From positions 62,001 through 126,000 of the IMG/VR virus record IMGVR_UViG_3300042326_002445: a stretch of DNA of 64,000 bases; one strand, written 5' to 3'. Of the stretch, positions 29,998 through 44,849 are shown piece by piece (the stretch's first letter is position 1; each line of letters begins with the position of its first letter). The notes below the pieces were generated by a model, which was not told the origin of the DNA, ran no database searches, and was given only the letters and a program-made list of their open reading frames with translations. A program made the position numbers and the translations under genes.

Positions 29998-30838
29998 GAT
30001 GAATAAGCTAGCCATTAAAGACGCCGTTAAGAAGGCAAAAGAAGAAGTCGATGGGGTATCTATTGAAATTAAAAAACAAATTTCTTTTCAAGAAAATTCC
30101 GACCTCTTTCCTTCAGAAACTTTCAAAATAGCAAATTCAGATTGGCTTGACGAGCGTATTGCTGGTGAATTTAGATCAAAAAACATCATTGAATGGAACA
30201 AGAAAGACTTTTTAGATTTTGTTAAGCATCTTTATTTTCAAAAATTTGTTTCTTCCGTGCACATACCTCCAGCTCATGGATATATGTATTTGAATGTTAT
30301 TGAAGAAATCTGCGTCAACAACTTTCCAGAATGCCAAGTCAAGATGCTAAAGGCTCGATATATATCTTGGTATTTTGAAAATCAAGTGTTAAAAGATACT
30401 GTTAGATCTAGAAGTTGGAATATTAAAAAAATGGTGCATCCAAAAGTTGTTGCATCTTTTATCATGCATTTTTCTTCTTCATCTTCTGAAAATCTTGAGG
30501 TAAAAAATAAAGATAGTAGACTTCCAGTAAATGAGTCTTTACTTGACTTATATTTTAGGGGAGACGCTGCAGAATTTGTCAAATGCTATGGAGTTGTAAT
30601 TCCATTTGCATTCTTATTTTATTCTAAAAAGTTTTCGTGGGAAGATGCTTTGGAATATGTTGCTGCAGCAGTTGCAGATTTAGTAACTACAAGAAATATT
30701 AAGGATAGCGTATTGAGGAAAACAACTGAGCAATACGGTCCTTATAGTGAGCGTTTTGACAAAATAGCGCCTGAGCGTTTGTTTGTTGCGTTGACAGACA
30801 AAACTGGCGTAAACTTTATAGGAGTAAAGATAAGATAA
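29990..30838 (+). CDS. Hypothetical protein
   Basis: 282 aa ORF coupled to both neighbours. Confidence 0.6.
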   Translation: MGRMNKLAIKDAVKKAKEEVDGVSIEIKKQISFQENSDLFPSETFKIANSDWLDERIAGEFRSKNIIEWNKKDFLDFVKHLYFQKFVSSVHIPPAHGYMYLNVIEEICVNNFPECQVKMLKARYISWYFENQVLKDTVRSRSWNIKKMVHPKVVASFIMHFSSSSSENLEVKNKDSRLPVNESLLDLYFRGDAAEFVKCYGVVIPFAFLFYSKKFSWEDALEYVAAAVADLVTTRNIKDSVLRKTTEQYGPYSERFDKIAPERLFVALTDKTGVNFIGVKIR

Positions 30839-31332
30839 TGAGTTCCTTAGCTCAAAAATACCCGGTTAATTTCAACATTCGTGCTTCTTTTGTGCACCTG
30901 ATTGATGAGTCAGGAAGGTCTTGTGGTTCTGTACATATTGATGATGCCCTTAGGAGGGCGCGAGATGCAGGGCTGGACCTTGTTCAGGTTTCTGTTGACT
31001 CAAACCGTCCAACTTGCAAGATTATGGATTTTGGAAAGTTCAAATATGAACTTTCAAAGCAGAAACAGTCCTCCACGCACAAAACGAAAGAGCTTTTTAT
31101 AACTGCCCATATTGGCAAGCATGACCTTGAAACTAAGGTAAATAAGCTAAAAGAGTTTGTTTCCAAAAAATATTCTGTTCTTTTTGGAGTGAAGTTTAAG
31201 ACAAAAAAAGAAAAGTTTAATGTTGAGCCACTCAAGCAGATGATAGTAAATTGCTTGAGCGAAGCTGGTATTGTCACTGAAAATATTGAGTTTCAGTATT
31301 CTCCCGATAAAATTACTGTGTTTATAAAATGA
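30838..31332 (+). CDS. infC: Translation initiation factor IF-3
   Basis: NFNIRASFVHLIDESG...DALRRARDAGLDLVQV...PTCKIMDFGKFKYE (IF3-N); KELFITAHIGKHDLETKVNKLKEF (IF3-C). Confidence 0.9.
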   Translation: MSSLAQKYPVNFNIRASFVHLIDESGRSCGSVHIDDALRRARDAGLDLVQVSVDSNRPTCKIMDFGKFKYELSKQKQSSTHKTKELFITAHIGKHDLETKVNKLKEFVSKKYSVLFGVKFKTKKEKFNVEPLKQMIVNCLSEAGIVTENIEFQYSPDKITVFIK

Positions 31333-32108
31333 CCGAAATAGAAAGTGTATATAACAAAAAGCTTTCAGAATTGAGAGCAAAATGTGGAGTGTACAGGCCT
31401 GCTGAGAATAGGTGTCCTGCGGCTCGCTGTATTTGTTCATCAATGGCTGAGTGCATGGCTTATCATAGCAGTGCTCTACCCCATGGTTACGTAGACGTAG
31501 AAATATCTTCTTTCAACGGTCATGTAAACGGTAATAGAACTGTAGATAATCATGTAGTGGCTACAGCTATAGCTAAAGTCATGAATTATTGTTTTGGTGA
31601 TTCTTTAGTTAAGCCAGATGCTTCTAGGTATGACTTGTACAAAGCTTCTGTTATGGATCAAAGATTTTCTTCAGGCACTAATCTTATTATACACGGAGAA
31701 AGTAAATCTGCCAATAAGAATAAGTTAGGCAAAACTATGCTTGCTTCTATAGTCATGAAAGAAGCAATTTGGAGAAGAATGTTTAAAGACAATAAGGCAT
31801 ACACTTACATGTTTAAAAGTTGTGCTGAGATTGTTGATGATATTATATCAAAAAGGTCTGCTGATGCTCAGGTTAATTCTTTTAATGCAGACTGGCTTTG
31901 CATAGACGATTTATTTTTGTCTAGTAGGCAATCGCAGGGGCATATATTAGATCAAATAATGTCGGTTAGGTTGAGAGAAAATTTACCATCTATATTGGTT
32001 ATACAGTTTGACCCTTTTAAAATAAACAATCCAGAAGAGTCACTTGGCAACCATGTGATGAAGATGCTATCCGATAAATCAAATACGTTTGTAGTTTCTT
32101 TGGGTTGA
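31329..32108 (+). CDS. DnaC/DnaI (IstB-like) helicase loader
   Basis: Cys-rich N-terminus; HGESKSANKNKLGKT (expanded Walker A); WLCIDDL (Walker B); directly upstream of DnaB. Confidence 0.65.
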   Translation: MTEIESVYNKKLSELRAKCGVYRPAENRCPAARCICSSMAECMAYHSSALPHGYVDVEISSFNGHVNGNRTVDNHVVATAIAKVMNYCFGDSLVKPDASRYDLYKASVMDQRFSSGTNLIIHGESKSANKNKLGKTMLASIVMKEAIWRRMFKDNKAYTYMFKSCAEIVDDIISKRSADAQVNSFNADWLCIDDLFLSSRQSQGHILDQIMSVRLRENLPSILVIQFDPFKINNPEESLGNHVMKMLSDKSNTFVVSLG

Positions 32109-32109
32109 T

Positions 32110-33564
32110 ATGCAAGCAGATACAGAAAATCCACATGTAAAGTTGTTATTTCTTTTGATACAATCAAAAGAAAATGTTGAAGAAGTTCTTGCTACTGTTC
32201 AAGAGCCAAGTAATCTATTTGTTGAGCCATCTCACCAAGCTCTTCTTAAGGCATGCATTTGGGCAAGAGACAAGAATAAAAATTTGACTTCCGAGCAATT
32301 GGAGCATTTCTGTAGATTTAATCTTAACTATACTCCTCAAAAGACTGCAGTATTAGTAGCAGAATATTCTGCTATTGAAATGATAGAGGGCACTAAGAAG
32401 GAAGATTTGAATGTTTTGGTGAGTGAATGTCAAAATCTTTATTATTATAGATTTTTAAAATTTGAATTAGACAAGATTAAGACAGACAGGTCTCCAGATT
32501 TCTTTAAGAAATTAAATACGTTACATGACAGTATTGGAAAATGCTTATCTACTGGAGCTAGTAATTCTTTTAGTTTTCATGATACAGTTGAAAACTTTTC
32601 CTCATTCGTAGAAGATCTGCATGTTAAGGCCAATCACCCTGAAAAAAGAATTGTATGTGGCATCAAGGAAATTGATGACTGCATGACTGTAGGATTTAGG
32701 CCTGGCACGCTGACCCTTACTGTTGCTGACGTTGGTGGAGGTAAGTCCACCATGATGCTTAACATAGCTTACAATTTATGGAAAAGAAATTGTAACGTGC
32801 TATTCCTTCCGCTAGAAATGCCATGGGAAGAAATATTTAAAAAGTTTTTATCAAGAGAAACTTTAATTGAATTTGAAAAGTTTGCTAGACCAGAATTGAT
32901 GACGGAAAAAGACTGGGAAATTTTACGAAAAAGATCTGATGAACTTGCTTCAATGAGGCAAAAGCTTGTGTGGGCTGATGTAAAAAGTAGACCAACAGTT
33001 CAGGAAATAAAAAGAGCTATTGAAAGCAAAATGCATTACTTTAAGCCAGATGTGGTTGTTATTGATTATATTGCGAATATAAAACCTGATGGCAAGGTAG
33101 ATAATTGGCTTGCAATTGGAGACATCTTAAAAGAACTAAGAGCATTTGGAAAACAGTATGGATTTGCGATATTGAGTGCTGCCCAAATGACAAGAGATGG
33201 TATTAAGAAGCTTAAAACGGATAAAGATCAGTCTAAGAGTCCTGGCAGCGAAGACCTGCGTGGTAGTCATGAATATTCTGCAGATGCAGACAACATATTT
33301 GCGCAGTCTCCGTCTCCTGATGAGCCAAATAGAAAGATGCTTTTATGGTGTATCAAAGCTCGTTATGGAAAAAAGACTTTTGATGGTAAAAATTATGCTA
33401 TTTTAGATTTCTATCCAGAATACAGCAAGATAGACAGCTCTACTGCTTATTCTTTTGATGTTAACGATGAAGAGTTTAAAAAGCAGCTTGATGCTATGTC
33501 TGGATTCGCTAAGCCACAGCAATCTGAGCAGGCTACAGAAGATGACTATGGGTGGATGACTTAA
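32110..33564 (+). CDS. dnaB: Replicative DNA helicase DnaB family
   Basis: GFRPGTLTLTVADVGGGKST, LPLEM, VVIDY, SAAQMTR, SHEYSADAD, KARYG. Confidence 0.9.
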   Translation: MQADTENPHVKLLFLLIQSKENVEEVLATVQEPSNLFVEPSHQALLKACIWARDKNKNLTSEQLEHFCRFNLNYTPQKTAVLVAEYSAIEMIEGTKKEDLNVLVSECQNLYYYRFLKFELDKIKTDRSPDFFKKLNTLHDSIGKCLSTGASNSFSFHDTVENFSSFVEDLHVKANHPEKRIVCGIKEIDDCMTVGFRPGTLTLTVADVGGGKSTMMLNIAYNLWKRNCNVLFLPLEMPWEEIFKKFLSRETLIEFEKFARPELMTEKDWEILRKRSDELASMRQKLVWADVKSRPTVQEIKRAIESKMHYFKPDVVVIDYIANIKPDGKVDNWLAIGDILKELRAFGKQYGFAILSAAQMTRDGIKKLKTDKDQSKSPGSEDLRGSHEYSADADNIFAQSPSPDEPNRKMLLWCIKARYGKKTFDGKNYAILDFYPEYSKIDSSTAYSFDVNDEEFKKQLDAMSGFAKPQQSEQATEDDYGWMT

Positions 33565-34091
33565 TGAAAGAGTATATTGACAAGCTAAAGCGCAAAGTCA
33601 GGATCGCAGATGTCTTAAGAGAAAGAGGTATCAATCCATCTAGATCTCATGGCGGTAAATTAGTTTATAAGTGTCCGTTGCATAAGGGGGATAATTCTCC
33701 AAGTTTTTATGTGTATGAAAAAGATACTGGAGATGATTATTTTTGCTATGGCTGTAAAGCTGGCGGTAATGTAGTTCATTTAGTAAAATCTCTTAATAAT
33801 TGTAGTGGTTCTGAGGCTGTTAAGTCTTTAGGTGAGATAGCTGGCATAGAAGTTGATCCGTATTTTTATCAATATGATCTTGATGTTTATATTGAAAGTC
33901 CATCATACGCCAGTGTTGATATAGATGAGTTGTTATGCAAGTCTACCTTGTCTTTTAGGAAACTAAGACAAATGAATGCAATAAAGCACATTGACAGCAT
34001 TGATGTCAAGTGGAAAAAAATTGACATTGCTTATTGGGCTAACGATGTACAATCAATGAAAGAAAATCATTCATGGATCAATGGAAAATAA
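33564..34091 (+). CDS. Stand-alone primase zinc-binding domain (CHC2) protein; start ATG 33564 (TAATG overlap with dnaB)
   Basis: IADVL...CPLHKGDNSPSF...YFCYGCKAGGNVVHLV...EAVKSL. Confidence 0.85.
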   Translation: MKEYIDKLKRKVRIADVLRERGINPSRSHGGKLVYKCPLHKGDNSPSFYVYEKDTGDDYFCYGCKAGGNVVHLVKSLNNCSGSEAVKSLGEIAGIEVDPYFYQYDLDVYIESPSYASVDIDELLCKSTLSFRKLRQMNAIKHIDSIDVKWKKIDIAYWANDVQSMKENHSWINGK

Positions 34092-34501
34092 AAAATAAAG
34101 AAGAAGATTATTCAGTATCCTTTGATAGTTCTTTAATAGAAAAGTGTCTTGGTCAATATTCTAGAGTTGTTAAAAAGATGAATGAGGTAGATCCTTTTGC
34201 TCTTAAATGGACATTGCAATCTAGTCTTACCGTGAATCATCCAGTCGGTTCTTTTACTTGTGTATGTAATTTTTATTATGATGGAAAAGTGGTAATATAT
34301 GACGCAGGTGGTCAAATCATGAAAGCTCATAATATAAATGATATTAGATTTATTAAAAAATCAATTTCATGGTTAGGCTGGAAGTTGTTGACCGCAACTC
34401 CATCCGAAATAGATAGTAGCGTAGATTTTTGGAAGCGTTGCTGGGAAACTGGCCTAATAGACAGTGACTATTTAGATCAAAAGTACAAAAGGAAAAATTA
34501 A
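34073..34501 (+). CDS. Hypothetical protein
   Basis: ORF in operon context; Trp-rich. Confidence 0.55.
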   Translation: MDQWKIKNKEEDYSVSFDSSLIEKCLGQYSRVVKKMNEVDPFALKWTLQSSLTVNHPVGSFTCVCNFYYDGKVVIYDAGGQIMKAHNINDIRFIKKSISWLGWKLLTATPSEIDSSVDFWKRCWETGLIDSDYLDQKYKRKN

Positions 34502-34502
34502 G

Positions 34503-35009
34503 ATGGCTATTATAACTCAAAAAGAAAGTTTTTTACTTAAATTTAAACAAGAAAATTCTCAGGTAGGTTCAAATCCTCTTGAAATTTCTGTCACCAAATC
34601 CAGCAATGATTATGTAATAGAAATTCGTTCTGATAAGAAAAATTTAATTAAGACTGATTTAGATTCTTTAAGGGAAATAATTAACTACATAGATTCAAAA
34701 ATAAACTTTACAAAACCAGTTGTAAAAAATAGCAGTTCTTTTGAAGACTTAATAGGAAACAAAGAAGCAGAAAGATATTTAAAAATTAGTGGTAACAGTA
34801 ATATTACTTTTAACAATAATCAAGGTGCTAACGGTCCATCGCAAATTGAAAGTGTGACTCAATCATCGTCAGATGATGTTGGAGATTATTCAGATCTTTT
34901 AAAAGATATAGAAAAAAACAGTACAAACTCGATGCCAGGTGGGTTATATAATTCTCAGGCAGACGTGATTTTATCAAATGCCATAGATATGAGCTCTTTA
35001 ACAGATTAA
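34503..35009 (+). CDS. Hypothetical protein
   Basis: ORF in operon context. Confidence 0.55.
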   Translation: MAIITQKESFLLKFKQENSQVGSNPLEISVTKSSNDYVIEIRSDKKNLIKTDLDSLREIINYIDSKINFTKPVVKNSSSFEDLIGNKEAERYLKISGNSNITFNNNQGANGPSQIESVTQSSSDDVGDYSDLLKDIEKNSTNSMPGGLYNSQADVILSNAIDMSSLTD

Positions 35010-35013
35010 GTAT

Positions 35014-35262
35014 ATGGAATATAAATGCAGATTTGAAAGACTTGACAAAATAAAAACAGAAGACTTAAAGAAAATTAGTCTTTGCACTGATTGTCATAGC
35101 TTTGATTGTAGCAACCCAATACAAAATGTTACTATTAGTGTTTTTGGCATTAATAAAACAGTGCGAGCTTATGTAACTCCAAACAATATATATGGAGTTC
35201 AGGATTGTGAAGGTTTTAGCTGTCGTTCTCTTACGGAGGAAGAAGATGAGTCTGAAGATTAA
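35014..35262 (+). CDS. Small Cys-rich hypothetical protein
   Basis: CTDCHSFDC...DCEGFSC. Confidence 0.55.
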   Translation: MEYKCRFERLDKIKTEDLKKISLCTDCHSFDCSNPIQNVTISVFGINKTVRAYVTPNNIYGVQDCEGFSCRSLTEEEDESED

Positions 35263-36544
35263 TAATAGTAATTTTGTTCATTTACACAATCATTCTGAAT
35301 TTAGTGCATTCGATGGTTTGAATAAAATGTCAGAGTTTCCCAGACTTGCTAGAAAAATGGGATTTAAGTCTCTTGGAATAACTGATCACGGTAATGTCGG
35401 CGGTTTAATTAAGTTTTTTCAAGAATGCACTAAGTCAGTTGACAAGAATGGTGTAAAAATAGAATATGATCCGATCAAGCCTATTTTAGGTTGTGAATTT
35501 TATCTTGCAAAAGATAGATTTGCAAAGAGTAAAAAAGATCAACCTGATGGAAGAAAAGGAAACAGGCACATTGTTTTGATAGCAAAAAATTGGCAAGGCT
35601 TTCAGAATTTATGCACGCTTTCAGAAAAAAGCTGGACAGAGGGTTTTTATAATGACCCAAGAATTGATTTTGATTTATTAACTAAGCACCATGAAGGACT
35701 TATATGCAGCACTGCATGTTTAAGTTCTGTGGTAAATAATAATTTGCTGCATGGCAGATATGATCAGGCTAAAAAAGTTGCAACTATATTAAAAAATATA
35801 TTTGGAGAAGATTTTTATTTTGAGGTGATGTATCACGGATTAGATGCTGAAAGGTACATTATCCCAGATATTTTTAAACTTTCAGATTCACTAGGATGCA
35901 AAGTATTAGCAACCAATGATGTTCACTATTCTCACAAAGAAGATGGTGCAAGTCATGAAGTACTCATGTGCATGAGTACTTCAAGATGCATACATGATCC
36001 AAAAAGATTAAAGTTTCCTTATCATGAGTTTTATCTAAAAAGCGCTGAGGAAATGGCTCAGATTTTTAAAAATCGTTTAGATTCCTTATACAATACTCTT
36101 GAGGTCGCTGATAAGATAGATCATAAGGATATATCAAAAAACTTCGGAGGTATGAGACTGCCAAAGTTCCCATTACCAAATGATTTTTCTGATCCTCATG
36201 ACTATTTGGAATATTTAGCTTGGGACGGACTAAAGCAGTTGCACTTAGATCATTCTCAAAAGCATATCGACAGATTAAGACTTGAGCTTGAAGATGTAAA
36301 GATTGCTAAAATGAACAACAATTATGACTTTGCAACTTATTTTTTAATTGTTCGTGACTATATACAATATGCAAATAATAAGGGCATACTTACAGGATGT
36401 GGCAGAGGTTCTGGATTTGGTAGCCTTTTACTAAAGACTCTAGGCATTACATATGGAGTTGACCCAATAGAACATGATTTGTTGTGGGAGCGCTTCTTAG
36501 GCTTTGACACAAAGCGTTTTGTAAAGGAGCAAGACTTTGTCTAA
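35246..36544 (+). CDS. dnaE: DNA polymerase III alpha, N-terminal piece (PHP domain plus start of palm); start ATG 35246
   Basis: FVHLHNHSEFSAFDG, ITDHG, GCEFY, RHIVL, STACL, ATNDVHY, GRGSGFGS, WERFL; SD GGAGGA at 35235. Confidence 0.92.
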   Translation: MSLKINNSNFVHLHNHSEFSAFDGLNKMSEFPRLARKMGFKSLGITDHGNVGGLIKFFQECTKSVDKNGVKIEYDPIKPILGCEFYLAKDRFAKSKKDQPDGRKGNRHIVLIAKNWQGFQNLCTLSEKSWTEGFYNDPRIDFDLLTKHHEGLICSTACLSSVVNNNLLHGRYDQAKKVATILKNIFGEDFYFEVMYHGLDAERYIIPDIFKLSDSLGCKVLATNDVHYSHKEDGASHEVLMCMSTSRCIHDPKRLKFPYHEFYLKSAEEMAQIFKNRLDSLYNTLEVADKIDHKDISKNFGGMRLPKFPLPNDFSDPHDYLEYLAWDGLKQLHLDHSQKHIDRLRLELEDVKIAKMNNNYDFATYFLIVRDYIQYANNKGILTGCGRGSGFGSLLLKTLGITYGVDPIEHDLLWERFLGFDTKRFVKEQDFV

Positions 36545-38489
36545 TCTAGAAGAAATAAAAAATAAACTTTCTAATTCTTCTAGGTATGCTCAATTGAATA
36601 GTATTGGCAAACAAAGATGTATAGATGAAATAGAATCAATGAACTTTTCTCCTGGGCTATCTGGAGATACTGTGTTAGAAGAGTTCTTTGCCCTTGTTAA
36701 AAAACTGGAAGGCAAAAATGGTTCTAAAAATTCCATAAATAGTTTTGTTGCCTATTGCTTTGAAATGACATCAAAGCTTCCTGACATAAAAGATGAATTC
36801 TTGCCGTCTCGACGCATTTTTGCTAGAGCTGGATTTCCTGATATTGACGCAGATTTTGACTATGAAAGACGACATGAGGTATATGAATATCTGATTGAAA
36901 AGTACGGGAGAGATAGAGTCGGGAATATTGGGACTTATGGCACATTAAAAATGAAAAGCTATATTACCAGAGTTGTTAAGGCTCTTGATCTAACAAATAG
37001 TTTTCATTTAGGTAAGGAAAGTTATGTCAAAAACAACAACATGTTAGTTCGTGAGATCATAGATTCTTTGCCTGAGCAAAAAGGTGCATTTTTAAAGGTT
37101 AGAGATGACGAAGGTGAAGATCATGTTATAAAAAATCTTTCTGACGCCATGGCTCACTGCGATTCTTTTTCTCAATATATGAAAAAGTATTCCCAGATAT
37201 CTGAACATTCAAAAAGGATAGAAGGTTTGGCTTCAAGTTACGGGGTTCACGCTGCAGGAATTGTGATATCTGGAGAGCCCTTGGCTCAAGTCGCTCCATT
37301 AAGAGCCACAAGTAAGTCTGATGAAAATTCTGGAGCGGAATATGCCACGCAATTTGCTTATGAAGATCTTGAATATCTAGGGCTTATTAAATTTGACATA
37401 TTGGCTCTTAGTACGTTGAGTGTAATATCTGAAACTGTAAAAACTATAAAAGAACGTCTTAACATTGATATTGATGTTCAAAAATTACCGCTCGATGATG
37501 AAAAATCATTTGAGCTTTACAGGAGCGGTAATTTGACAGGTGTCTTTCAATGTGAAGAAAAAGGTATGCAAAAGACCATGATGCAAATGGGGGTGGACAG
37601 ATTTGAAGACATTTGCGCAGGCATAGCTCTATTTAGACCTGGACCAATGGCTAGTATTCCAAAATATTGTGCTAGAAAAAATGGGACAGAGCAAATAGAC
37701 TATTATCATGAGTCTATTGTCAAATATGTTGAAAAAATTTTAAAACCCACATATGGCATTCTTGTATATCAAGAACAGGTTATGCAGATTTGTAACAGCC
37801 TTGCTGGGATGACCGTAAGCGATGGATATCAAGTTATTAAAGCTGTAGGCAAGAAAAAAGAAGATCAATTAAATAAATACAAATCTATCTTTGTTGATGG
37901 ATGTTGCATTAATGGAGTTGATAAATCCCTGGCTTCTAGATATTGGAATGAATTTATTATGCCATTTGCAGCGTATGGATTCAATAAATCACATTCTTAT
38001 TGCTATGGTCTTTTAAGTTATCAAACTGCATATTTAAAAGCTAATTTTCCATCAGAGTTTATGCTGAGCTATCTAAACGTTGAATGTTTACAAAAGAAAT
38101 GGGATCGTGTAGATTTGCTTATTGATGAAACTAAGAGAATGGGTATTTCAATAGGGTTAAAAAATCTTAATGTTTGCAAGCTTAAATTTGTGATGAACGA
38201 AGATCGCGTTGGAAATAGGGTAAAATATTACATTACACCATCTTTATTGTGCAAAGGTTTAAAAATGAGCGCAGCTGAAGAGATACAAGAAAAGCAGCCA
38301 TTTAAAAGTTATGAAGATTTTGTTCAAAAAGTTGACACTAGCGTTGTGGATACCGAAGCTATTACTGCATTGCAAGACGCTGGATTCTTCCCAAAAACAA
38401 AAGACCCAGTAGAGAAATTTGTAAAACTTAGAGATCATATACGAGCAACACGAAAAAAAGGCATGAGCGGTGTCGATATATTTCAATAA
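36537..38489 (+). CDS. dnaE: DNA polymerase III alpha, C-terminal piece (catalytic palm, thumb, fingers; no OB/CTD)
   Basis: FPDIDADF (36837), GVHAAG, TQF, GLIKFDILAL (Asp 37395), GVFQCE, ALFRPGP, GILVYQEQVM, YGFNKSHS; TTG start with SD AAGGAG 7 nt upstream. Confidence 0.92.
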   Translation: MSNLEEIKNKLSNSSRYAQLNSIGKQRCIDEIESMNFSPGLSGDTVLEEFFALVKKLEGKNGSKNSINSFVAYCFEMTSKLPDIKDEFLPSRRIFARAGFPDIDADFDYERRHEVYEYLIEKYGRDRVGNIGTYGTLKMKSYITRVVKALDLTNSFHLGKESYVKNNNMLVREIIDSLPEQKGAFLKVRDDEGEDHVIKNLSDAMAHCDSFSQYMKKYSQISEHSKRIEGLASSYGVHAAGIVISGEPLAQVAPLRATSKSDENSGAEYATQFAYEDLEYLGLIKFDILALSTLSVISETVKTIKERLNIDIDVQKLPLDDEKSFELYRSGNLTGVFQCEEKGMQKTMMQMGVDRFEDICAGIALFRPGPMASIPKYCARKNGTEQIDYYHESIVKYVEKILKPTYGILVYQEQVMQICNSLAGMTVSDGYQVIKAVGKKKEDQLNKYKSIFVDGCCINGVDKSLASRYWNEFIMPFAAYGFNKSHSYCYGLLSYQTAYLKANFPSEFMLSYLNVECLQKKWDRVDLLIDETKRMGISIGLKNLNVCKLKFVMNEDRVGNRVKYYITPSLLCKGLKMSAAEEIQEKQPFKSYEDFVQKVDTSVVDTEAITALQDAGFFPKTKDPVEKFVKLRDHIRATRKKGMSGVDIFQ

Positions 38490-38492
38490 GCT

Positions 38493-38789
38493 ATGAATAT
38501 AGAAATACGAAAATCAATATCTAGAAAAATAAATACTGGACAATATGAAAATATTGTAATTACTTGTGAGTTACAAGGTAACTCTGTTGTTGAAAATGAT
38601 GCAGACTTATATAAATTACAAAAAGAGATAACAGATAAGCTAATTAAAGATTATGTTATTACAGAGAATGCAGTTCTTGAAGAGCTTGAGTTACAAGAAA
38701 AAAAAGCTTTTATGGAGTCGCCAAGCACTGCTGATAATAAAGTAAAATTGTCTTTAACTCCAGAGCAGGAAAGTGAGTTGTTTGGATGA
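38493..38789 (+). CDS. Hypothetical phage protein
   Basis: RKINTGQYENIVI resembles a motif recurrent in small phage proteins (recalled, not searched). Confidence 0.55.
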   Translation: MNIEIRKSISRKINTGQYENIVITCELQGNSVVENDADLYKLQKEITDKLIKDYVITENAVLEELELQEKKAFMESPSTADNKVKLSLTPEQESELFG

Positions 38790-39913
38790 TTGACAAAAAC
38801 GATCTCGATGATATATTTGGAATACCTCAAGATGGAAGTCATCTTGATGATGATAGTGGTAGCACAGATGATGTAGCCTTTGGTGGAGTTGTTTCTCAAA
38901 ACAGTAATAAAACTTTTTTTGATCAAGTAAATGTTTTGATTAATGATACAAATTCTATAGCTAAATCTGAAGATGAAATTATAAAGGATTCTAAAATTAA
39001 AAAAGATAAAAAAGAATCAGGAGGCGATGGCGATGAGCTTCAAATTAAAAAAAATAATCAATCAGCACAAACGCATAGTGAAGATACTACTTCCCTCAAC
39101 AGCAAAGCCGATCATAAAGTTCTTGCCGAATCCGATGAACTTCTGGGAGATAAACTTCATACCAGAGAAGGACTTCATAGACCTGAGATGGATAACGCCG
39201 TCAAGAGCAATGCAGTTGAAGCGCAAGTAATAATAAAACTAAGCGAGTGGAATGTTAATTCAAAAGACTTGTCATTTGCATCATTTTATGAAATGAAAAA
39301 AGATGCTTTGTCAAGCTGGCTATTGCCTGGTGGTGAAATTAATTTTATACATACACACGATGAACTGGTGAATGCAAAAGTTGATTTAAGTACAATAGAA
39401 TTTGGTGATTTACACGCCATGTTTGATGCATTAAAAGGTGTTCAGCACTGGAAGGACAGAGTAGTTGAAATCAGTTTAAGAGTTAATGCTCAATATTATT
39501 CGTGGAAAAGAGCTATAGATCTTTTCCGTGGCACTCTTGCAAGAATGCATTATGAAAAGCCAGCGGAAAAACAGGATGGCGTAGTTATGGAACACATGGG
39601 AGATATGATAAGATATTTCTCTCAACTTGAATCTTTGCATGCAAATGTAGATGCAATTGTTAGAAATTTGGATAATGCTTTCGATTGTATATCAAGACAA
39701 ATAACTGTTTCATTGCCACAAATTACAAAAGATACTGATAGTTTAGAAAAAAGAGCTTCTAAAAGTATTCACAATGCCAGTGCAACACATGATGGTTTTG
39801 CCGATATAATGCAATCAGCAGATCGTTTGCCGTTGAGCAAAAGTTCTGCTTTTAAAAACAATAACGCCTCTTCTTCAAAGAAGATAGGCACAGTCGAATG
39901 GAATGAGATCTAA
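38786..39913 (+). CDS. Hypothetical protein, acidic disordered N-terminus plus helical C-terminus (possible recombination mediator)
   Basis: Lies immediately before SSB and RecA; helical segment ending DCISRQIT. Confidence 0.4.
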   Translation: MIDKNDLDDIFGIPQDGSHLDDDSGSTDDVAFGGVVSQNSNKTFFDQVNVLINDTNSIAKSEDEIIKDSKIKKDKKESGGDGDELQIKKNNQSAQTHSEDTTSLNSKADHKVLAESDELLGDKLHTREGLHRPEMDNAVKSNAVEAQVIIKLSEWNVNSKDLSFASFYEMKKDALSSWLLPGGEINFIHTHDELVNAKVDLSTIEFGDLHAMFDALKGVQHWKDRVVEISLRVNAQYYSWKRAIDLFRGTLARMHYEKPAEKQDGVVMEHMGDMIRYFSQLESLHANVDAIVRNLDNAFDCISRQITVSLPQITKDTDSLEKRASKSIHNASATHDGFADIMQSADRLPLSKSSAFKNNNASSSKKIGTVEWNEI

Positions 39914-39933
39914 TTTTTAGAAAGAGGTAACAA

Positions 39934-40581
39934 ATGGGACTAGTTGATTGGACATCGTTTGGTAAGGGAGAAAAGTCAGGTAATGGAGCAAAGTACCTGA
40001 AGCTTGAGGCTGGCAAGTCTTATCGCATACGGCCTGTATTCAAGCCACACATTTTCTATAAGTATTTTGTTGAAAGACCTCAGGGAGGTTTTGGCCAGGC
40101 TATTACCGATACTCCAGATTCTTGTGTAATCAGAAAGAAGTATGGAGAGCAGGCAAAGCAGCGTTTTGCAGTTAATGTGATTGACAGAGCAGACGGCATT
40201 ATTAAGGTCCTTGAGGGCCCTATTAGTATCCTGAAGCAGTTTTCCACATGGGCTAGTGAGACTGGCACAGATCCTGGCAGCAAGGATGGTGGTGAATTTG
40301 CGATTAGAGTTGAATGCCCAGGGAATGATAAGAAGAAGACTAGGTATGTGGTCAGCTTTATTAACTATGCGCCATTTACAGATGAGGAAAAAGCTCTTAT
40401 CAAGTCTGGAGCTATGAATGATCTTGAGAACTTGTATAAGGCCACTCCTCAAGAGCAGATTGAGGCTAAGGTTTATGGATCTGAAGAAGATTCTGGCTCA
40501 TCATCTCAAAAGGGCAAAAAGGCTCCAGAGAAGCAGGGTGCTTCTTCGAAGTCGCAACTTTCTGACGATCTTGACTTTTAA
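39934..40581 (+). CDS. Single-stranded DNA-binding protein, gp32-like
   Basis: YLKLEAGKSYRIRPV, FAVNVIDRADGIIKVLE, DPGSKDGGEFAIRVE, TRYVV, acidic tail SDDLDF; SD GAGGT. Confidence 0.75.
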   Translation: MGLVDWTSFGKGEKSGNGAKYLKLEAGKSYRIRPVFKPHIFYKYFVERPQGGFGQAITDTPDSCVIRKKYGEQAKQRFAVNVIDRADGIIKVLEGPISILKQFSTWASETGTDPGSKDGGEFAIRVECPGNDKKKTRYVVSFINYAPFTDEEKALIKSGAMNDLENLYKATPQEQIEAKVYGSEEDSGSSSQKGKKAPEKQGASSKSQLSDDLDF

Positions 40582-40601
40582 TTTATTAAGAAGGAAAAAT
40601 A

Positions 40602-41786
40602 ATGAAGAAATCATCGGTTGGTATTGATAATTTGAAAGGCTTTCAGCTTGGAGCAAATGTTGAGGTAAAAGACCTTATCCCAACTGGTCATGCAGAGTTG
40701 GACCACACTATTGCTGCAGGTCTGATGGAGGATGGAGAAAAGTTCACTACAGGTGGTCTTCCTCTTGGTAAGTTATGCCTTTTTTATGGAAATGAAGGAA
40801 GCGGAAAGAGTAGCTTAGCTTATCGCGTTGTTGGATCTGCTCAACGTATGGGGTATAACTGCGCGTGGGTTGATACAGAACATTCTTTTAGCGATCAGCT
40901 TGCTGAAGTAAATGGTGTTGATAAGAAAAAGCTTTTTTATAGTAACCTCATTAACCTTGAAGATCCAGATAAAATTTCTACAGCAGAAAATGTAATGGAT
41001 ATGGTTATTAGCGCATGTGCTAGCAAGAAGATTAACGTCATTGTGCTAGACTCCGTAGCTAATTTGATTCCAGAGCGTGTTATGGATAATGACGCAGATA
41101 AAGATACCGTGGCAGAATTAGCTAGAGTTCTTAGTAAGACACTTGGAAAAATGCTGAGTTTTGCTGCTTCTAACAATGTATTGGTCATTTTTATCAATCA
41201 GTTAAGAGAAAAAATTGGAGTAATGTTTGGCAGTCCAGATACTATGCCAGGAGGAAGAGCTCTCAAACATGCCTCTAGCTTAATACTGAAGGTTACTAAG
41301 CTTGAGTCAAAAGCTCATAACATCATGATGCAAAATGAAGATGGCACAGAGCGTTTGATAGGAAGATATTCTAGCGTCATGATTGAAAAAAATAGATTTG
41401 CAAAACCAAATCAGGGATCTATCCCAGTTGCAATTTATTATGAACCATATTTTCCAGATGTTTCTGACGTTGCATTTGATGCAGGCAGAAATACAAAAGT
41501 GATCAAAGTTAGAAATGGTACTTTTGCATGGAGAGATATCAAGGCGGACGGAAGAAAGGCTTTTATAGATCTCATTAAAGATGCAGATGTTCTTGAAAAG
41601 TTAGTAGAAGAAATTAGAGAGCAGGCCGAAGAGCAGTCTATTGTTTTGCCAATAGAATTGGTAAAGTTTGATAAGGAAAAGTATATTGAGACTATCAAAA
41701 ATACTAAGCCTGCAGGCCAAAGCTCAGATTCTCAGACAGTTAGTGCTAAGAAAAAGAAAGAAGTCCCTGAAGAGGCAGAAGCCTGA
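40602..41786 (+). CDS. recA: RecA recombinase
   Basis: GGLPLGK...YGNEGSGKS, VDTEH, VIVLDSVANL, FINQLREKIGVMFGSPDTMPGGRALKH, KNRF. Confidence 0.95.
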   Translation: MKKSSVGIDNLKGFQLGANVEVKDLIPTGHAELDHTIAAGLMEDGEKFTTGGLPLGKLCLFYGNEGSGKSSLAYRVVGSAQRMGYNCAWVDTEHSFSDQLAEVNGVDKKKLFYSNLINLEDPDKISTAENVMDMVISACASKKINVIVLDSVANLIPERVMDNDADKDTVAELARVLSKTLGKMLSFAASNNVLVIFINQLREKIGVMFGSPDTMPGGRALKHASSLILKVTKLESKAHNIMMQNEDGTERLIGRYSSVMIEKNRFAKPNQGSIPVAIYYEPYFPDVSDVAFDAGRNTKVIKVRNGTFAWRDIKADGRKAFIDLIKDADVLEKLVEEIREQAEEQSIVLPIELVKFDKEKYIETIKNTKPAGQSSDSQTVSAKKKKEVPEEAEA

Positions 41787-42544
41787 TGGAATCAGATCAG
41801 TTCTCAATGCTTGAGAGAGAGCAAATCATAGCTCTTTCTCAAGCATCTTTATATGAGAATAGCAATGACGCTGCTGAGGCAAGAAGTTATTTATTTGAAA
41901 CTAGAAAAATATGTGAAGAAACAGTAAGAGATTTTTATTTAGGATATGTTCCAGTAAGGGTAAACGACAGAAAAATAAGTGGTCGTATTATTTTTCCCAT
42001 TTGGGATTGTCACGGAGAAACCGTTGCTCTTTCAACAAGAGATTTTAGATCTTCTATTAAAAACAGAGGGCATTGGCATGAATCTTTTAATAAAAAACAT
42101 CATTTGTATGGCTGGAAAATGGCAGAGTCTTTTATTAAAGATACTGGTCAGGTTATAGTGGTAGAGGGTCAGTTTGATGTTCTTGCTATGCATTCTCATG
42201 GATTCAAAAATACGGTAGGAATTCTTGGCAGTCATTTGTCAGTATTTCATATTATGTTATTGATAAGATATGCAGATGAGATTGTATTTGCATTTGATAA
42301 CGATGAGGCTGGCAAAAAAGCTTATCAAGAAAGTTACAAAATAATAGCATCAAATGGATTATTGTACGATAAAACATTGAGTTTCTTTAAGGTTGATCTG
42401 GGCGTTCACAAGGATCCAGACGAATTATTAAAGAGTTCAGGAAGAGACGACATGGAAATGCACATAGAAGCATCAAGAAAGGTGAAGAAAAAATATGACG
42501 CAGCACAATGGTCAGCAAATGTATCTGATCTCTCAATTGATTGA
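41786..42544 (+). CDS. dnaG: DnaG-type primase catalytic (TOPRIM) core lacking the zinc-binding domain
   Basis: ARSYL, LGYVP, GRIIFPI, HLYG, VVEGQFDV, FDNDEAG, KDPDE; no CHC2 motif at the N-terminus. Confidence 0.9.
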   Translation: MESDQFSMLEREQIIALSQASLYENSNDAAEARSYLFETRKICEETVRDFYLGYVPVRVNDRKISGRIIFPIWDCHGETVALSTRDFRSSIKNRGHWHESFNKKHHLYGWKMAESFIKDTGQVIVVEGQFDVLAMHSHGFKNTVGILGSHLSVFHIMLLIRYADEIVFAFDNDEAGKKAYQESYKIIASNGLLYDKTLSFFKVDLGVHKDPDELLKSSGRDDMEMHIEASRKVKKKYDAAQWSANVSDLSID

Positions 42545-43430
42545 TCAATTTTTGCTCTACAAGCAAAGTAAGCCTAGTAACAGATCTTATAAGGTATTCC
42601 ACCCAAGCGCATTTGGCAAGTGCCTTCGTAAAATGCAATACCAAAAATATGTTGCAGAGGGAATGATGGAGGCTCCAGTACAGTCTGTTGAGCCGAGAAT
42701 GATAAGAATATGGGATACTGGTCACACTATGCATTCTAGATGGAGTACGTACATGGAGGAACTTGGCGTACTTAGAGGTGTTTGGAAATGCGCCAATCCT
42801 CTTTGCAAGCATATCCATGGAGAGGATGAAAAGATAGGTATTTTTAAGCCAGCAAAATGCGAAAAATGCGATTCTACTAAATTTCATTATGAAGAAATAA
42901 CCATTGATTACCCAGAGTTAAATTTTCATGGACATTGCGATCAGGTCTTAGACTTTGCTAATATGGACGAAGAGTTTAAAAATAGTAGTCAATTTCAATC
43001 CCTTGCTAGTATGATGCAGTTTATGCCATCTTCTCCAATTGTTGTTGACATGAAAACTATTGGGAAGAATCAGTGGTCTAAATTGGAAAAAGGTGCGCAT
43101 TTTTATTATATAGTTCAGCTTACTGTCTATCTACATGTTCTTAATTTAGATATGGGAATTATTATATATGAAAGAAAAGATGATTCCGAAATTAAGATGT
43201 TTAAAGTTACAAGGAATGATGAGTGGTGGAGCGTGATAAACAAGCAGGCTAAGTTAATGCTCAGTATGTTTGAGAAAAAAACTTTGCCACCGCCAAGGCC
43301 CGTAGGAAAAGCAGATTTTGATTGTAAATTTTGTGAATTTAGAGATACATGTCATGACTCTAATATATGGAATTCTCCTAATTTGGATGAATTGAGGAGA
43401 AAATTTTATAGTTTTGATTACTTTGAATAA
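42495..43430 (+). CDS. Cas4-like PD-(D/E)xK exonuclease with Fe-S Cys motif and an inserted zinc-finger-like segment
   Basis: HPSAFGKC, GHTMH, GHCD, VDMKT, QLTVY, CKFCEFRDTC; insert CANPLC...CEKC. Confidence 0.8.
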   Translation: MTQHNGQQMYLISQLIDQFLLYKQSKPSNRSYKVFHPSAFGKCLRKMQYQKYVAEGMMEAPVQSVEPRMIRIWDTGHTMHSRWSTYMEELGVLRGVWKCANPLCKHIHGEDEKIGIFKPAKCEKCDSTKFHYEEITIDYPELNFHGHCDQVLDFANMDEEFKNSSQFQSLASMMQFMPSSPIVVDMKTIGKNQWSKLEKGAHFYYIVQLTVYLHVLNLDMGIIIYERKDDSEIKMFKVTRNDEWWSVINKQAKLMLSMFEKKTLPPPRPVGKADFDCKFCEFRDTCHDSNIWNSPNLDELRRKFYSFDYFE

Positions 43431-43442
43431 TAGGAGATTTGT

Positions 43443-43769
43443 ATGAGTGCACAAAACATTGATAATGTTTTAAAGATTCGTGGAGATAAGGAATTTCAGC
43501 AGAATAATGCCAGTGGAAAAGCATATATCAGAAAGCTTGCTTCTGCGATATTAACAGTTCTTGATAAGTATGATGAAGTTAAGCTTAAAGCTGTTGGGGC
43601 TCCATCGGTTAATAATGCAGTGAAGGCTTTTATTGTTGCAAGAAATATGTCAAAAAACAAGAGTTTAGACCTTGTTTGTACTGCATCTTTTGACGTTGCT
43701 GAATTTGATGGTGGTCAAAAGACTGCGATCATGTTCACCATATTCGCAGATGAGGTTGTTGATGAATAA
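43443..43769 (+). CDS. spoVS: SpoVS family (Alba-like fold) protein
   Basis: LASAIL...VKLKAVGAPSVNNAVKAFIVAR...LDLVCTASF..AEFDGGQKTAIMF aligns with the SpoVS pattern IQAIGAGALNQAVKAVAIAR...LICIPAF...IDGEERTAI; SD AGGAG. Confidence 0.8.
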   Translation: MSAQNIDNVLKIRGDKEFQQNNASGKAYIRKLASAILTVLDKYDEVKLKAVGAPSVNNAVKAFIVARNMSKNKSLDLVCTASFDVAEFDGGQKTAIMFTIFADEVVDE

Positions 43770-44280
43770 TAAAATATCTGAATGCGTTCAAAAGGTTAAA
43801 GATTTAGATAATCTTATAGAGAATTTGTCAAATGAAAAGAAATCTATAGACTCTAAAATGGCAGAATGCAAAAAAGAAAGAGATGCCATTAGGGAATCAA
43901 TATCTCACATGATGAATGAAAATTCTTCTATCTTTGCTACTCTGCATGATGGAACAGAAATTTCTATTAGAAATGGAGTGAAAACTTTTGAATGGCCATC
44001 AGATACTGATATGATAGATTATCTTAAATCAATAGGTAAATTTGAAAAAATATGTACAGTTGAAACTGTCATAAATAAAAGAAAGTTAAAGTCTATATTA
44101 GATGATCTTTGTGACTGTGATGGACTTCCTGATTTTGTAAAAATTAATCAAGAAAAAGTTTTGCAAATTAGGTCTCCTAGTAAGCAGTCAGAAGAAAACG
44201 GCTCTGCAAAACAAGCTTCAAGCAAGTCTCAAAAGATGAGCATAGATGACTTTGATGACAACTCATTAGATGGAATATAA
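43762..44280 (+). CDS. Coiled-coil protein, possibly Mu Gam/Gp157-like; start ATG 43762
   Basis: N-terminal coiled coil, then GTEISIR...DYLKSIG...VETVINKRKLK; SD GAGGT. Confidence 0.4.
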   Translation: MNNKISECVQKVKDLDNLIENLSNEKKSIDSKMAECKKERDAIRESISHMMNENSSIFATLHDGTEISIRNGVKTFEWPSDTDMIDYLKSIGKFEKICTVETVINKRKLKSILDDLCDCDGLPDFVKINQEKVLQIRSPSKQSEENGSAKQASSKSQKMSIDDFDDNSLDGI

Positions 44281-44509
44281 AATGTCAAATGAAGTAGTAT
44301 GTTTAAATTTGTCTTACGACGATAGCAACGACATGTTGCTATGGACTATAAAGTTTCTTCATAATGAAGAAGTTATGAATATAGCATCTCCTGCTGCGTC
44401 TTTTGCAGATGCAGTAGGAATTAAGGGGAAAATTAATAAAGAAGATTGGGAAGAATTTTGCATTAAGATGAAAAACAAAAAATGCAATTTTGTTTTACCT
44501 AAGGAGTAG
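44270..44509 (+). CDS. Hypothetical protein
   Basis: ORF in operon context. Confidence 0.5.
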   Translation: MEYKMSNEVVCLNLSYDDSNDMLLWTIKFLHNEEVMNIASPAASFADAVGIKGKINKEDWEEFCIKMKNKKCNFVLPKE

Positions 44510-44512
44510 CAA

Positions 44513-44848: not shown

Positions 44849-44849
44849 A

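What the first reader, a model, noticed from the sequence alone, without database searches (positions are those of the whole stretch)
33564..42544. Primase split into two genes 7.7 kb apart
Seen: a CHC2 zinc-binding domain ORF coupled to dnaB (33564) and a TOPRIM core ORF without ZBD coupled to recA (41786). Known: DnaG normally carries both in one chain, and the ZBD can act in trans on another molecule's catalytic domain. Inference: an obligate trans two-subunit primase with the ZBD co-produced with the helicase, its extra C-terminal ~85 aa perhaps replacing the helicase-binding domain. Stand-alone CHC2 ORFs occur in other phages, so novelty needs checking.
Basis: partly seen in the sequence, partly recalled or inferred. 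Interest (0 to 1): 0.6.

Follow-up and report, generated by a model that had tools for sequence, protein, structure and literature searches.

The report
Split two-gene DnaG primase in phage
A lake-water jumbo phage encodes its DnaG-type primase as two separate proteins: a zinc-finger half made just after the helicase gene and a catalytic half made just after recA. The split is real and conserved across a whole phage lineage, including a cultured cyanophage, but it has already been noted in the literature and never tested at the bench.

Summary
ORF 33564-34091 encodes a canonical CHC2 primase zinc-binding domain (ZBD) followed by an orphan three-helix bundle, and its ATG overlaps the dnaB stop codon. 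ORF 41786-42544 encodes a complete DnaG catalytic core (RPD) with no ZBD and no helicase-binding domain, and its ATG overlaps the recA stop codon.

The held 223.6-kb record (about 55% complete) contains no second ZBD, no second TOPRIM core and no archaeo-eukaryotic-type primase. The same layout, dnaB-ZBD then several kb then recA-RPD, recurs in every relative I could fetch, down to 35% DnaB identity. It also occurs in the complete genome of the cultured Microcystis phage Mvi-JY20, which has exactly one ZBD and one TOPRIM hit, in separate genes. This is therefore an old, selected gene fission and not an artefact.

The most likely mechanism is inferred, not shown. The two halves probably reassemble on the DnaB N-terminal collar, as the ZBD and RPD of T4 gp61 dock separately on gp41.

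Novelty is modest. Iyer et al. 2021 already reported stand-alone primase zinc ribbons beside DnaG Toprim proteins in jumbo phages, and PHROGs holds short ZBD-containing families of this size. New here are the conserved coupling to dnaB and recA, the orphan C-terminal domain, and a cultured host-phage system in which to test a natural primase with no linker.

The parts
32110..33564 (+). dnaB-type replicative helicase (484 aa), ending in the acidic/aromatic tail DDYGWMT. Its stop codon overlaps the ZBD start codon.
   Evidence: Pfam DnaB_C E 1e-25 and phrog_19 E 1.6e-56. Profile A3 aligns over both the N-terminal and C-terminal domains with bacterial DnaB structures (4nmn residues 7-384, 2r6a residues 41-392) and with T4 gp41. 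Tail.
33564..34091 (+). ZBD subunit gene (175 aa from ATG 33564; 179 aa from GTG 33552)
   Evidence: PF01807 E 3.7e-16. Fifteen homologs of 175-179 aa at 47-80% identity. The start codon overlaps the dnaB stop in 6 of 6 loci examined.
33567..33857 (+). CHC2 zinc-ribbon domain (P0001 residues 6-102). Ligand codons: C41 33672-33674, H44 33681-33683, C65 33744-33746, C68 33753-33755.
   Evidence: AlphaFold model residues 1-106 superpose on the B. stearothermophilus primase ZBD 1d0q (Z 12.5, rmsd 2.5 over 101 aa) and on Aquifex DnaG 2au3 (Z 12.2). The ligands are invariant.
33909..34088 (+). Orphan C-terminal three-helix bundle of the ZBD subunit (P0001 residues 120-179)
   Evidence: Helices at 124-140, 147-162 and 166-176, pLDDT 67-82. 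Only generic or de novo helical-bundle matches. Invariant residues T132, R136, W154, D158, Y161, W175, G178. No Pfam family. No true relative outside the family among 1.84 billion representatives.
40602..41786 (+). recA/UvsX-like recombinase (394 aa). The last base of its ORF is the first base of the TOPRIM ATG.
   Evidence: Pfam RecA E 5.7e-47 and phrog_97 E 6.9e-57. recA lies next to the TOPRIM gene in L084-L090, L004, L015 (reversed order) and Mvi-JY20.
41786..42544 (+). RPD (catalytic) subunit gene, 252 aa: the DnaG N-subdomain, TOPRIM and C-terminal helices, with no ZBD and no helicase-binding domain
   Evidence: Toprim_2 E 2.3e-16 and DNAG_N E 2.1e-9. Model pLDDT 91.4. Foldseek to the E. 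coli DnaG core 1dde/3b39: TM 0.74, rmsd 3.2-3.3 over ~252 columns, E ~1e-16. Invariant E127, D171, D210 and D212, near-invariant D173.
42506..42541 (+). Low-confidence C-terminal tail of the RPD subunit (residues 241-252, QWSANVSDLSID), conserved in the close clade. A possible docking peptide.
   Evidence: pLDDT about 50. The tail is conserved in 10 close homologs. A different tail (IFDF) occurs in a second subclade, and more distant lineages have none.
41807..41846 (+). 16-bp RNA hairpin starting 21 nt inside the RPD ORF. A possible brake on RPD translation after recA.
   Evidence: Terminator scan. The MFE folds keep a 16-17 bp stem in L084 and L087, with different bases at the stem ends. The stem is absent in L088-L090.

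Best explanation
This is a two-gene DnaG-type primase produced by an old gene fission.

The ZBD subunit carries the zinc ribbon plus a lineage-specific three-helix bundle. It is translated by ribosomes coming off dnaB. The RPD subunit carries the whole catalytic core. It is translated by ribosomes coming off recA.

The two subunits most likely do not need a covalent linker, because each docks on the N-terminal collar of the DnaB hexamer. This would resemble T4, where the ZBD and RPD of gp61 bind two neighbouring gp41 N-terminal dimers. Held there, the ZBD would read the template and hold the 5' end of the primer while the RPD polymerises ribonucleotides.

Shown: the split, the completeness of each half, their conservation and co-occurrence, the start/stop overlaps, and the absence of another primase in the sequence held.

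Inferred: that they act together, that DnaB is the scaffold, and which surfaces touch.

Probable history: fused relatives carry the primase right after dnaB, so the ZBD half probably stayed there and the RPD half moved next to recA.
For: Each half is intact:
- The ZBD fold matches solved primase ZBDs at Z 12.5 and 12.2, and the CHC2 ligands are invariant.
- The RPD model (pLDDT 91) matches the E. coli DnaG core at TM 0.74, and the acidic active-site residues are invariant.

Both are under selection and travel together:
- ZBD-only proteins of 175-179 aa are found down to 47% identity. TOPRIM-only proteins of 205-262 aa are found down to ~35%.
- Both were confirmed together on L084-L088 and L090. 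L089 and L091 each show only the recA-RPD or the dnaB-ZBD pair, because the fetched stretch stops short of the other.
- The dnaB-ZBD pair persists at 35% DnaB identity on a 502-kb contig.
- The ZBD start overlaps the dnaB stop in 6 of 6 loci.
- Adjacency of TOPRIM and recA survives an order flip in L015 and a change of polymerase type in Mvi-JY20.

No other primase was found:
- The own record has one PF01807, one PF13155 and one DNAG_N hit, and no Prim-Pol (PF09250) or DNA_primase_S (PF01896) hit.
- The complete Mvi-JY20 genome has one ZBD hit and one TOPRIM hit, in separate ORFs of 160 and 218 aa.

The helicase is a two-tier DnaB with a homologous N-terminal domain.

Literature:
- Separate T7 ZBD and RPD make primers at low efficiency (PMC2910064).
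- T4 gp61 ZBD and RPD dock independently on gp41 (PMC10187150).

Fused relatives L010 and L025 have the primase just downstream of dnaB.
Against: - There is no biochemical or expression evidence. None of the listed sequencing runs that hold the region is on record as RNA.
- The record is only about 55% complete, so a second primase in the missing part is not excluded for this phage.
- The complex prediction returned no verdict and cannot be used.
- The three-helix bundle has no detectable link to any helicase-binding domain.
- The RPD motif III reads HWHES instead of the usual KYxN(S/T). This could mean altered chemistry.
- The RPD gene sits in a recombination cluster (recA, PD-(D/E)XK nuclease, UvrD). 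Its main partner might therefore not be DnaB.
Confidence: 0.65

Rival explanations
1. The two subunits form a stable heterodimer directly, for example the three-helix bundle of the ZBD subunit binding the RPD or its C-terminal tail. Binding to the helicase would be secondary. This is still a two-subunit primase, but assembled differently.
For: The ZBD subunit carries a conserved extra domain of the kind often used for protein-protein contacts. The close clade's RPD ends in a conserved low-confidence tail. Every ZBD-only protein in the six lineages inspected has a 60-110 aa extension after the zinc ribbon.
Against: The extensions and tails are not conserved between lineages, yet the split persists. 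No fusion protein links the bundle to an RPD. hhalign finds no relation between the bundle and the RPD protein. No valid binding prediction was obtained.
Confidence: 0.2
2. The RPD protein is a self-sufficient, low-specificity primase working with RecA in recombination-dependent replication. The ZBD-only protein would then have a different job at the helicase, such as loading, regulation or origin recognition.
For: The RPD gene is tied to recA and is followed by a PD-(D/E)XK nuclease and UvrD. The ZBD gene is tied to dnaB. No helicase loader was recognised in the module.
Against: The ZBD keeps the canonical primase-type CHC2 ribbon, matching PF01807 at E 3.7e-16. The T7 form that lacks the ZBD also lacks template-directed primer synthesis (PMC2910064). 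Both halves were found on every clade contig where both positions could be examined. The nearest full-length relatives of both halves are the same records, for example MT839051.
Confidence: 0.12
3. A conventional full-length primase lies in the unsampled ~45% of this genome, and the two ORFs are accessory or decaying paralogs.
For: CheckV completeness is 55%.
Against: The replication module is in the held part (dnaB, DnaE, recA). Both ORFs keep all catalytic and ligand residues across homologs down to 29-47% identity. The complete Mvi-JY20 genome, with the same layout, has no fused DnaG.
Confidence: 0.03

Closest known systems
Stand-alone primase zinc ribbon beside DnaG-like Toprim proteins in jumbo phages (Iyer, Anantharaman, Krishnan, Burroughs, Aravind 2021, Viruses 13:63, PMC7824862)
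   Same: A DnaG-type Toprim protein is accompanied by a separately encoded primase-type zinc ribbon in large phages.
   Different: That paper reports it for 'group 2' phages with a family B polymerase. This phage has a split Pol III alpha and no PF00136 hit in the held record. The paper gives one sentence and mentions neither the gene coupling nor the C-terminal domain, and offers no mechanism.
Bacterial DnaG (E. coli, Aquifex, Bacillus)
   Same: The ZBD fold, the RPD fold and the acidic active-site residues are the same. It partners a two-tier DnaB helicase.
   Different: DnaG is one chain of ZBD, linker, RPD and helicase-binding domain. Here there are two chains encoded 7.7 kb apart, with no helicase-binding domain, and motif III reads HWHES rather than KYxNS.
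T4 gp61-gp41 primosome (PMC10187150)
   Same: The ZBD and RPD each have their own contact with the helicase N-terminal collar, which gives a physical model for a primase that needs no linker. The ZBD model aligns with the gp61 ZBD (8dvf_H, Z 6.5).
   Different: gp61 is a single chain, and its linker is proposed to help set primer length. Docking of the present proteins is not shown.
T7 gene 4 protein: 63-kDa and 56-kDa forms, and isolated ZBD plus RPD fragments
   Same: A natural ZBD-less form exists. It lacks template-directed synthesis. Separated ZBD and RPD complement each other weakly in vitro (PMC2910064).
   Different: The T7 primase is fused to the helicase. Its ZBD is a Cys4 ribbon. 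The ZBD-less form arises from an internal start, not from a separate gene.
Microcystis phage Mvi-JY20 (PP438412.1), a cultured phage with a complete genome
   Same: It has the same layout: DnaB, then a ZBD-only ORF with an ATGA overlap, then 9.3 kb, then RecA followed by a TOPRIM-only ORF. The whole genome has one ZBD hit and one TOPRIM hit.
   Different: The genome is 108 kb. It has a family A polymerase with an intein instead of a split DnaE. Its proteins are shorter (160 and 218 aa). All of these genes are annotated as hypothetical, and no paper was found.

Membership tests
DnaG-type (TOPRIM) primase | N-terminal CHC2 zinc ribbon with four metal ligands | tested here: met
   PF01807 E 3.7e-16. 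C41, H44, C65 and C68 are invariant. Fold Z 12.5 to 1d0q. The ribbon sits on a separate polypeptide.
DnaG-type (TOPRIM) primase | RNA polymerase domain: DNAG_N subdomain plus a TOPRIM fold with the conserved Glu, DxD and DPD acidic residues | tested here: met
   Pfam Toprim_2, Toprim_4 and DNAG_N. Invariant E127, D171, D210 and D212, near-invariant D173. TM 0.74 to 1dde/3b39.
DnaG-type (TOPRIM) primase | ZBD and RPD on one chain, joined by a flexible linker | tested here: not met
   They are separate ORFs 7.7 kb apart. The same holds in all clade relatives.
DnaG-type (TOPRIM) primase | C-terminal DnaB-binding domain | tested here: not met
   No Pfam match at E<=0.01 on either protein, nor at E<=0.1 on the ZBD extension. 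The RPD ends about 10 residues after its last helix. The ZBD extension is a generic three-helix bundle.
DnaG-type (TOPRIM) primase | Basic motif III KYxN(S/T) in the N-subdomain (motif recalled from knowledge of E. coli DnaG) | tested here: not met
   Residues 96-100 read HWHES, nearly invariant in this clade. The more distant TOPRIM-only proteins P0049 and P0050 keep KY(K/M)NT.
DnaG-type (TOPRIM) primase | Template-directed oligoribonucleotide synthesis | not testable with these tools
   This needs a biochemical assay.
Split primase of jumbo phages (stand-alone ZnR plus DnaG Toprim; Iyer et al. 2021) | A stand-alone primase-type zinc-ribbon ORF and a ZBD-less DnaG Toprim ORF in the same phage genome | tested here: met
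   Description in the paper.
Split primase of jumbo phages (stand-alone ZnR plus DnaG Toprim; Iyer et al. 2021) | Membership of their 'group 2' (family B DNA polymerase) | tested here: not met
   The polymerase is a split Pol III alpha. There is no PF00136 hit in the 223.6-kb record, which is incomplete.
T7 gp4-type primase-helicase fusion | Primase domain covalently fused to a DnaB-family helicase domain | tested here: not met
   DnaB, the ZBD and the RPD are three separate ORFs.
Archaeo-eukaryotic primase / Prim-Pol as an alternative primase | An AEP catalytic domain present in the genome | tested here: not met
   No PF09250 or PF01896 hit in the held record. Other AEP families were not searched.

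The most novel reading that the evidence does not exclude
Priming may be gated by where each half is delivered. The ZBD subunit would arrive with DnaB and the RPD subunit with RecA. A working primase would then form only where a helicase has been loaded onto a RecA-made recombination intermediate. This would tie lagging-strand priming to recombination-dependent replication, and it would do so without the linker that current T4/T7 models treat as a ruler for primer length.
Probability: 0.1. Interest if true: 0.75.

Novelty: new member of a known kind. Interest (0 to 1): 0.42.

Why it matters
In every primase studied so far, the zinc-binding and catalytic domains share one chain. In T4, and by my recollection in T7, the linker between them is proposed to help set primer length and to allow hand-off between subunits. 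A natural primase with no linker, conserved across a wide phage lineage, is a ready-made test of those ideas. It can show whether the helicase alone can hold the two halves in register, and what then sets primer length and site choice.

Microcystis phage Mvi-JY20 is cultured and has the same layout, so the question can be taken to the bench. For annotation, the result shows that 'hypothetical' ORFs of 160-180 aa after dnaB and of 220-250 aa after recA in such phages are the two halves of the primase.

Tried and rejected
- Complex prediction: DnaB, RPD and the ZBD subunit as partner. The verdict was 'no answer'. A control in which DnaB was replaced scored almost as high as the real set, so the job is evidence neither for nor against any binding. 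It is not used in the argument.
- Megablast of the region against cultured phages: no match.
- Searching IMG/VR with the two proteins or with alignment A1 found no close relatives, only matches at 38% identity or less.
The absence of a full-length primase could therefore be checked only in the own record and in Mvi-JY20.
- Helicase-binding-domain idea for the ZBD extension. Pfam gave nothing. Structure searches gave only generic helical bundles. The atlas feature search and fold search gave no specific lead. hhalign against the RPD protein gave nothing. The exhaustive profile search found only the family itself, a fragment, and a spurious repeat protein.
- I tested whether the 375-aa ORF after DnaE is a sliding clamp that could bind the RPD tail. 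There was no sequence or atlas support and no PF00712 hit, so the idea was dropped.
- The tree of RPD sequences was too poorly resolved to decide between one fission and several.
- Artefact, intron, intein and frameshift explanations are rejected. Ten plus-strand ORFs, including the DnaE halves and recA, lie between the halves. The layout recurs in independent assemblies, and the region is present nearly unchanged in 24 lake-water runs.

Full report
**What is there**

The window is bases 62,001-126,000 of a 223,646-bp IMG/VR virus record that CheckV rates at about 55% complete. From about 29,990 to 46,781, all sizeable ORFs lie on the + strand and abut or overlap. Pfam and PHROG scans give this order:

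| Coordinates | Product |
|---|---|
| 30838-31332 | IF-3-like protein |
| 32110-33564 | DnaB-type helicase |
| 33564-34091 | CHC2 zinc-ribbon (ZBD) protein |
| 34073-35262 | three small unknown ORFs |
| 35192-36544 and 36537-38489 | Pol III alpha, in two ORFs |
| 38493-40581 | three unknown ORFs |
| 40602-41786 | RecA |
| 41786-42544 | TOPRIM/DnaG-core protein |
| 42495-43430 | PD-(D/E)XK nuclease |
| 43443-43769 | SpoVS-like protein |
| 44787-46781 | UvrD helicase |

**The two halves**

*ZBD protein (P0001).*
- It matches Zn_ribbon_DnaG at E 3.7e-16 over residues 6-102.
- In 15 homologs, the four ligands C41, H44, C65 and C68 and the surrounding GDNSPSFYVY and GDD-x-x-CYGCK-x-GGN blocks are invariant.
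- An AlphaFold model (pLDDT 80) superposes residues 1-106 on the solved primase ZBDs 1d0q (Z 12.5, rmsd 2.5 over 101 aa) and 2au3 (Z 12.2).
- Residues 120-179 form a three-helix bundle that matches only designed or generic bundles.
- That extension has seven invariant residues but no Pfam family.
- A profile of the extension alone, searched against 1.84 billion representative proteins, found only a cluster representative of this same family (P0012), a fragment, and a spurious hit to a repeat-rich surface protein.
- It shows no relation to the TOPRIM protein.

*TOPRIM protein (P0002).*
- It matches Toprim_2, Toprim_4 and DNAG_N.
- Its model (pLDDT 91.4) matches the E. coli DnaG catalytic core at TM 0.74 and rmsd 3.2-3.3 over about 252 columns. 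It matches T7 and T4 primases less well.
- The TOPRIM Glu (E127), D171 and D173 of the DxD motif, and D210 and D212 of the DPD motif are invariant or nearly so.
- It is thus a whole RNA-polymerase domain, with no zinc ribbon and no helicase-binding domain.
- Two clade-specific oddities stand out. Residues 96-100 read HWHES where more distant TOPRIM-only proteins keep KY(K/M)NT. The protein also ends in a low-confidence but conserved tail, QWSxxVSDLSID.

**Is it more than chance or artefact?**

Six-frame searches of the whole record find one ZBD hit, one Toprim_2 hit and one DNAG_N hit. They find no Prim-Pol or DNA_primase_S hit.

Homologs exist at constant length:
- ZBD proteins of 175-179 aa, down to 47% identity.
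- TOPRIM proteins of 250-253 aa, down to 62% identity, then 205-262 aa down to about 35%.
- These proteins occur on shared contigs of 78, 250 and 370 kb.

The fetched contigs show the same gene order at every distance examined:
- L084-L086, with ZBD proteins at about 50% identity.
- L087, from a 370-kb contig.
- L088, with the TOPRIM protein at 44% identity.
- L090.
- L089, which shows the recA-TOPRIM pair only.
- L091, from a 502-kb contig with DnaB at 35% identity, which shows the dnaB-ZBD pair.

The ZBD start codon overlaps the dnaB stop codon in 6 of 6 loci. The stretch 33500-42600 is present nearly unchanged in 24 lake-water metagenome runs, none of them RNA. Ten plus-strand ORFs, including the DnaE halves and recA, lie between the two halves. 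Assembly error, frameshift, intron and intein are therefore excluded.

**How wide is the split?**

- Among about 80 diverse IMG/VR loci with a TOPRIM primase, most carry a recognisable zinc ribbon in the same ORF, and nearly all of the rest have a 30-140 aa N-terminal extension that could hold one.
- The loci that leave no room for a zinc ribbon are this clade, L004 and L015.
- Whole-record searches show that the L004 phage has a stand-alone ZBD ORF 21 kb upstream of its TOPRIM ORF. The L015 phage has dnaB followed by a 176-aa ZBD ORF and, 5.5 kb downstream, a 259-aa TOPRIM ORF followed by recA.
- The cultured Microcystis phage Mvi-JY20 (PP438412.1, complete, 107,975 bp) has DnaB (485 aa), then a ZBD-only ORF (160 aa) with an ATGA overlap. 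After 9.3 kb that includes a family A polymerase with an intein, it has RecA followed by a TOPRIM-only ORF (218 aa).
- The whole Mvi-JY20 genome gives one ZBD hit and one Toprim_2 hit. All of these genes are annotated as hypothetical. No paper on this phage was found.
- Fused relatives L010 and L025 place the primase just downstream of dnaB. The likely history is therefore a fission in which the ZBD half stayed put and the RPD half moved next to recA.
- A quick tree places the ZBD-less forms in at least two groups, but it is too poorly resolved to count fissions.

**Mechanism**

The shown facts are these:
- there are two intact, co-conserved halves;
- each is tightly coupled to a RecA-fold ATPase gene;
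- the helicase is a two-tier DnaB homologous over both its N- and C-terminal domains to bacterial DnaB and to T4 gp41;
- no other primase is found in what is held.

Two published results make a primase without a linker plausible. A mixture of separate T7 ZBD and RPD fragments synthesises oligoribonucleotides at low efficiency, while the natural ZBD-less 56-kDa form lacks template-directed synthesis (PMC2910064). In the T4 primosome, the gp61 ZBD and RPD each bind a different gp41 N-terminal dimer through their own helicase-interacting motifs, and the linker serves mainly as a tether or ruler (PMC10187150).

I therefore favour a helicase-scaffolded two-subunit primase (confidence about 0.65 that the two proteins together are the phage primase, and lower for the docking details). 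The rivals are:
- a direct ZBD-RPD heterodimer formed through the three-helix bundle and the tail (0.2);
- an RPD that works alone with RecA, while the ZBD protein serves the helicase in another role (0.12);
- a conventional primase hidden in the missing part of the genome (0.03).

The single complex prediction gave no verdict and is not used.

**Comparison with what is known, and novelty**

Iyer et al. 2021 (PMC7824862) state that DnaG-like primases of their group 2 jumbo phages tend to be accompanied by a stand-alone primase-type zinc ribbon. PHROGs also contains short families of 133-199 profile positions that match the ZBD: phrog_11992, phrog_18097 and phrog_360. The phenomenon is therefore already on record at the level of comparative genomics.

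I found no experimental study of a naturally split DnaG in the searched library.

What this case adds:
- it extends the split to Pol III-type phages (there is no family B polymerase hit in the record) and to Pol A-type phages;
- it shows the conserved dnaB-ZBD and recA-RPD coupling;
- it identifies an orphan C-terminal domain on the ZBD subunit and an altered motif III;
- it identifies a cultured phage in which the split can be tested.

I rate it a new member of a known kind, with interest 0.42.

Noticed in passing
window 35192-36544 and 36537-38489 (+): The Pol III alpha (DnaE-like) polymerase is also split. One ORF holds the PHP domain and the start of the palm. The other holds the rest of the palm, the fingers and the HhH motif. 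The second ORF starts at a TTG six nt after an AAGGAG and overlaps the first by 8 nt. The split is kept in all clade relatives. In L091 three genes lie between the halves. L004 has an unsplit 1130-aa gene. Iyer et al. 2021 describe a different, minimal split Pol III in other jumbo phages.
   Followed up: partly
window 41807-41846 (+): A 16-bp hairpin (MFE of the surrounding 120 nt is -41.9 kcal/mol) starts 21 nt inside the TOPRIM ORF. L087 has a 17-bp stem and L084 a 16-bp stem, with different bases at the stem ends, which suggests selection for the structure. It is absent in the more distant L088-L090. It may limit translation of the catalytic subunit relative to recA.
   Followed up: partly
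window 42071-42085 (+), TOPRIM protein residues 96-100: DnaG motif III reads HWHES, nearly invariant in this clade. The more distant TOPRIM-only proteins, and bacterial DnaG as I recall it, have KYxN(S/T). The meaning is unknown.
   Followed up: no
window 30838-31332 (+): A phage-encoded homolog of translation initiation factor IF-3 (IF3_N E 2.4e-24, weak IF3_C) lies two genes upstream of dnaB. It is conserved in L084-L087.
   Followed up: no
window 42495-43430, 43443-43769, 44787-46781 (+): A PD-(D/E)XK nuclease overlaps the 3' end of the TOPRIM gene by 50 nt. A SpoVS-like protein and a UvrD-family helicase follow. Together with recA they form a recombination cluster around the catalytic primase subunit.
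   Followed up: no
window 33541-33561 (DnaB C-terminus) and relatives L088, L090, L091: DnaB ends in an acidic/aromatic tail: DDYGWMT here, and DDWEWLDM, DDFSWFDDA and LEFDEFD in relatives. This resembles the partner-binding C-terminal tails of other replisome proteins, as I recall them.
   Followed up: no
L089 2406-4493; L090 6424-8418; L091 6060-9107; L101 7338-10703: Relatives carry inteins or LAGLIDADG elements inside replication and repair genes: the nuclease, a DEAD-box helicase, an AAA ATPase, and Pol A of Mvi-JY20. Such mobile elements are a plausible cause of the gene fissions in this lineage.
   Followed up: no
window 34073-34501 and 35014-35262 (+): Two small ORFs of unknown function (142 and 82 aa) after the ZBD gene are conserved, and are kept between the ZBD gene and DnaE, as far out as L091. 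They have no significant Pfam or PHROG match. They could be further primosome or loader parts.
   Followed up: no
whole record G000 (223,646 bp): No hit to beta-clamp (PF00712), SSB (PF00436, only E 0.18) or family B polymerase (PF00136) in the held record. The processivity and ssDNA-binding factors of this Pol III-type replisome remain unidentified, or lie in the missing part.
   Followed up: partly
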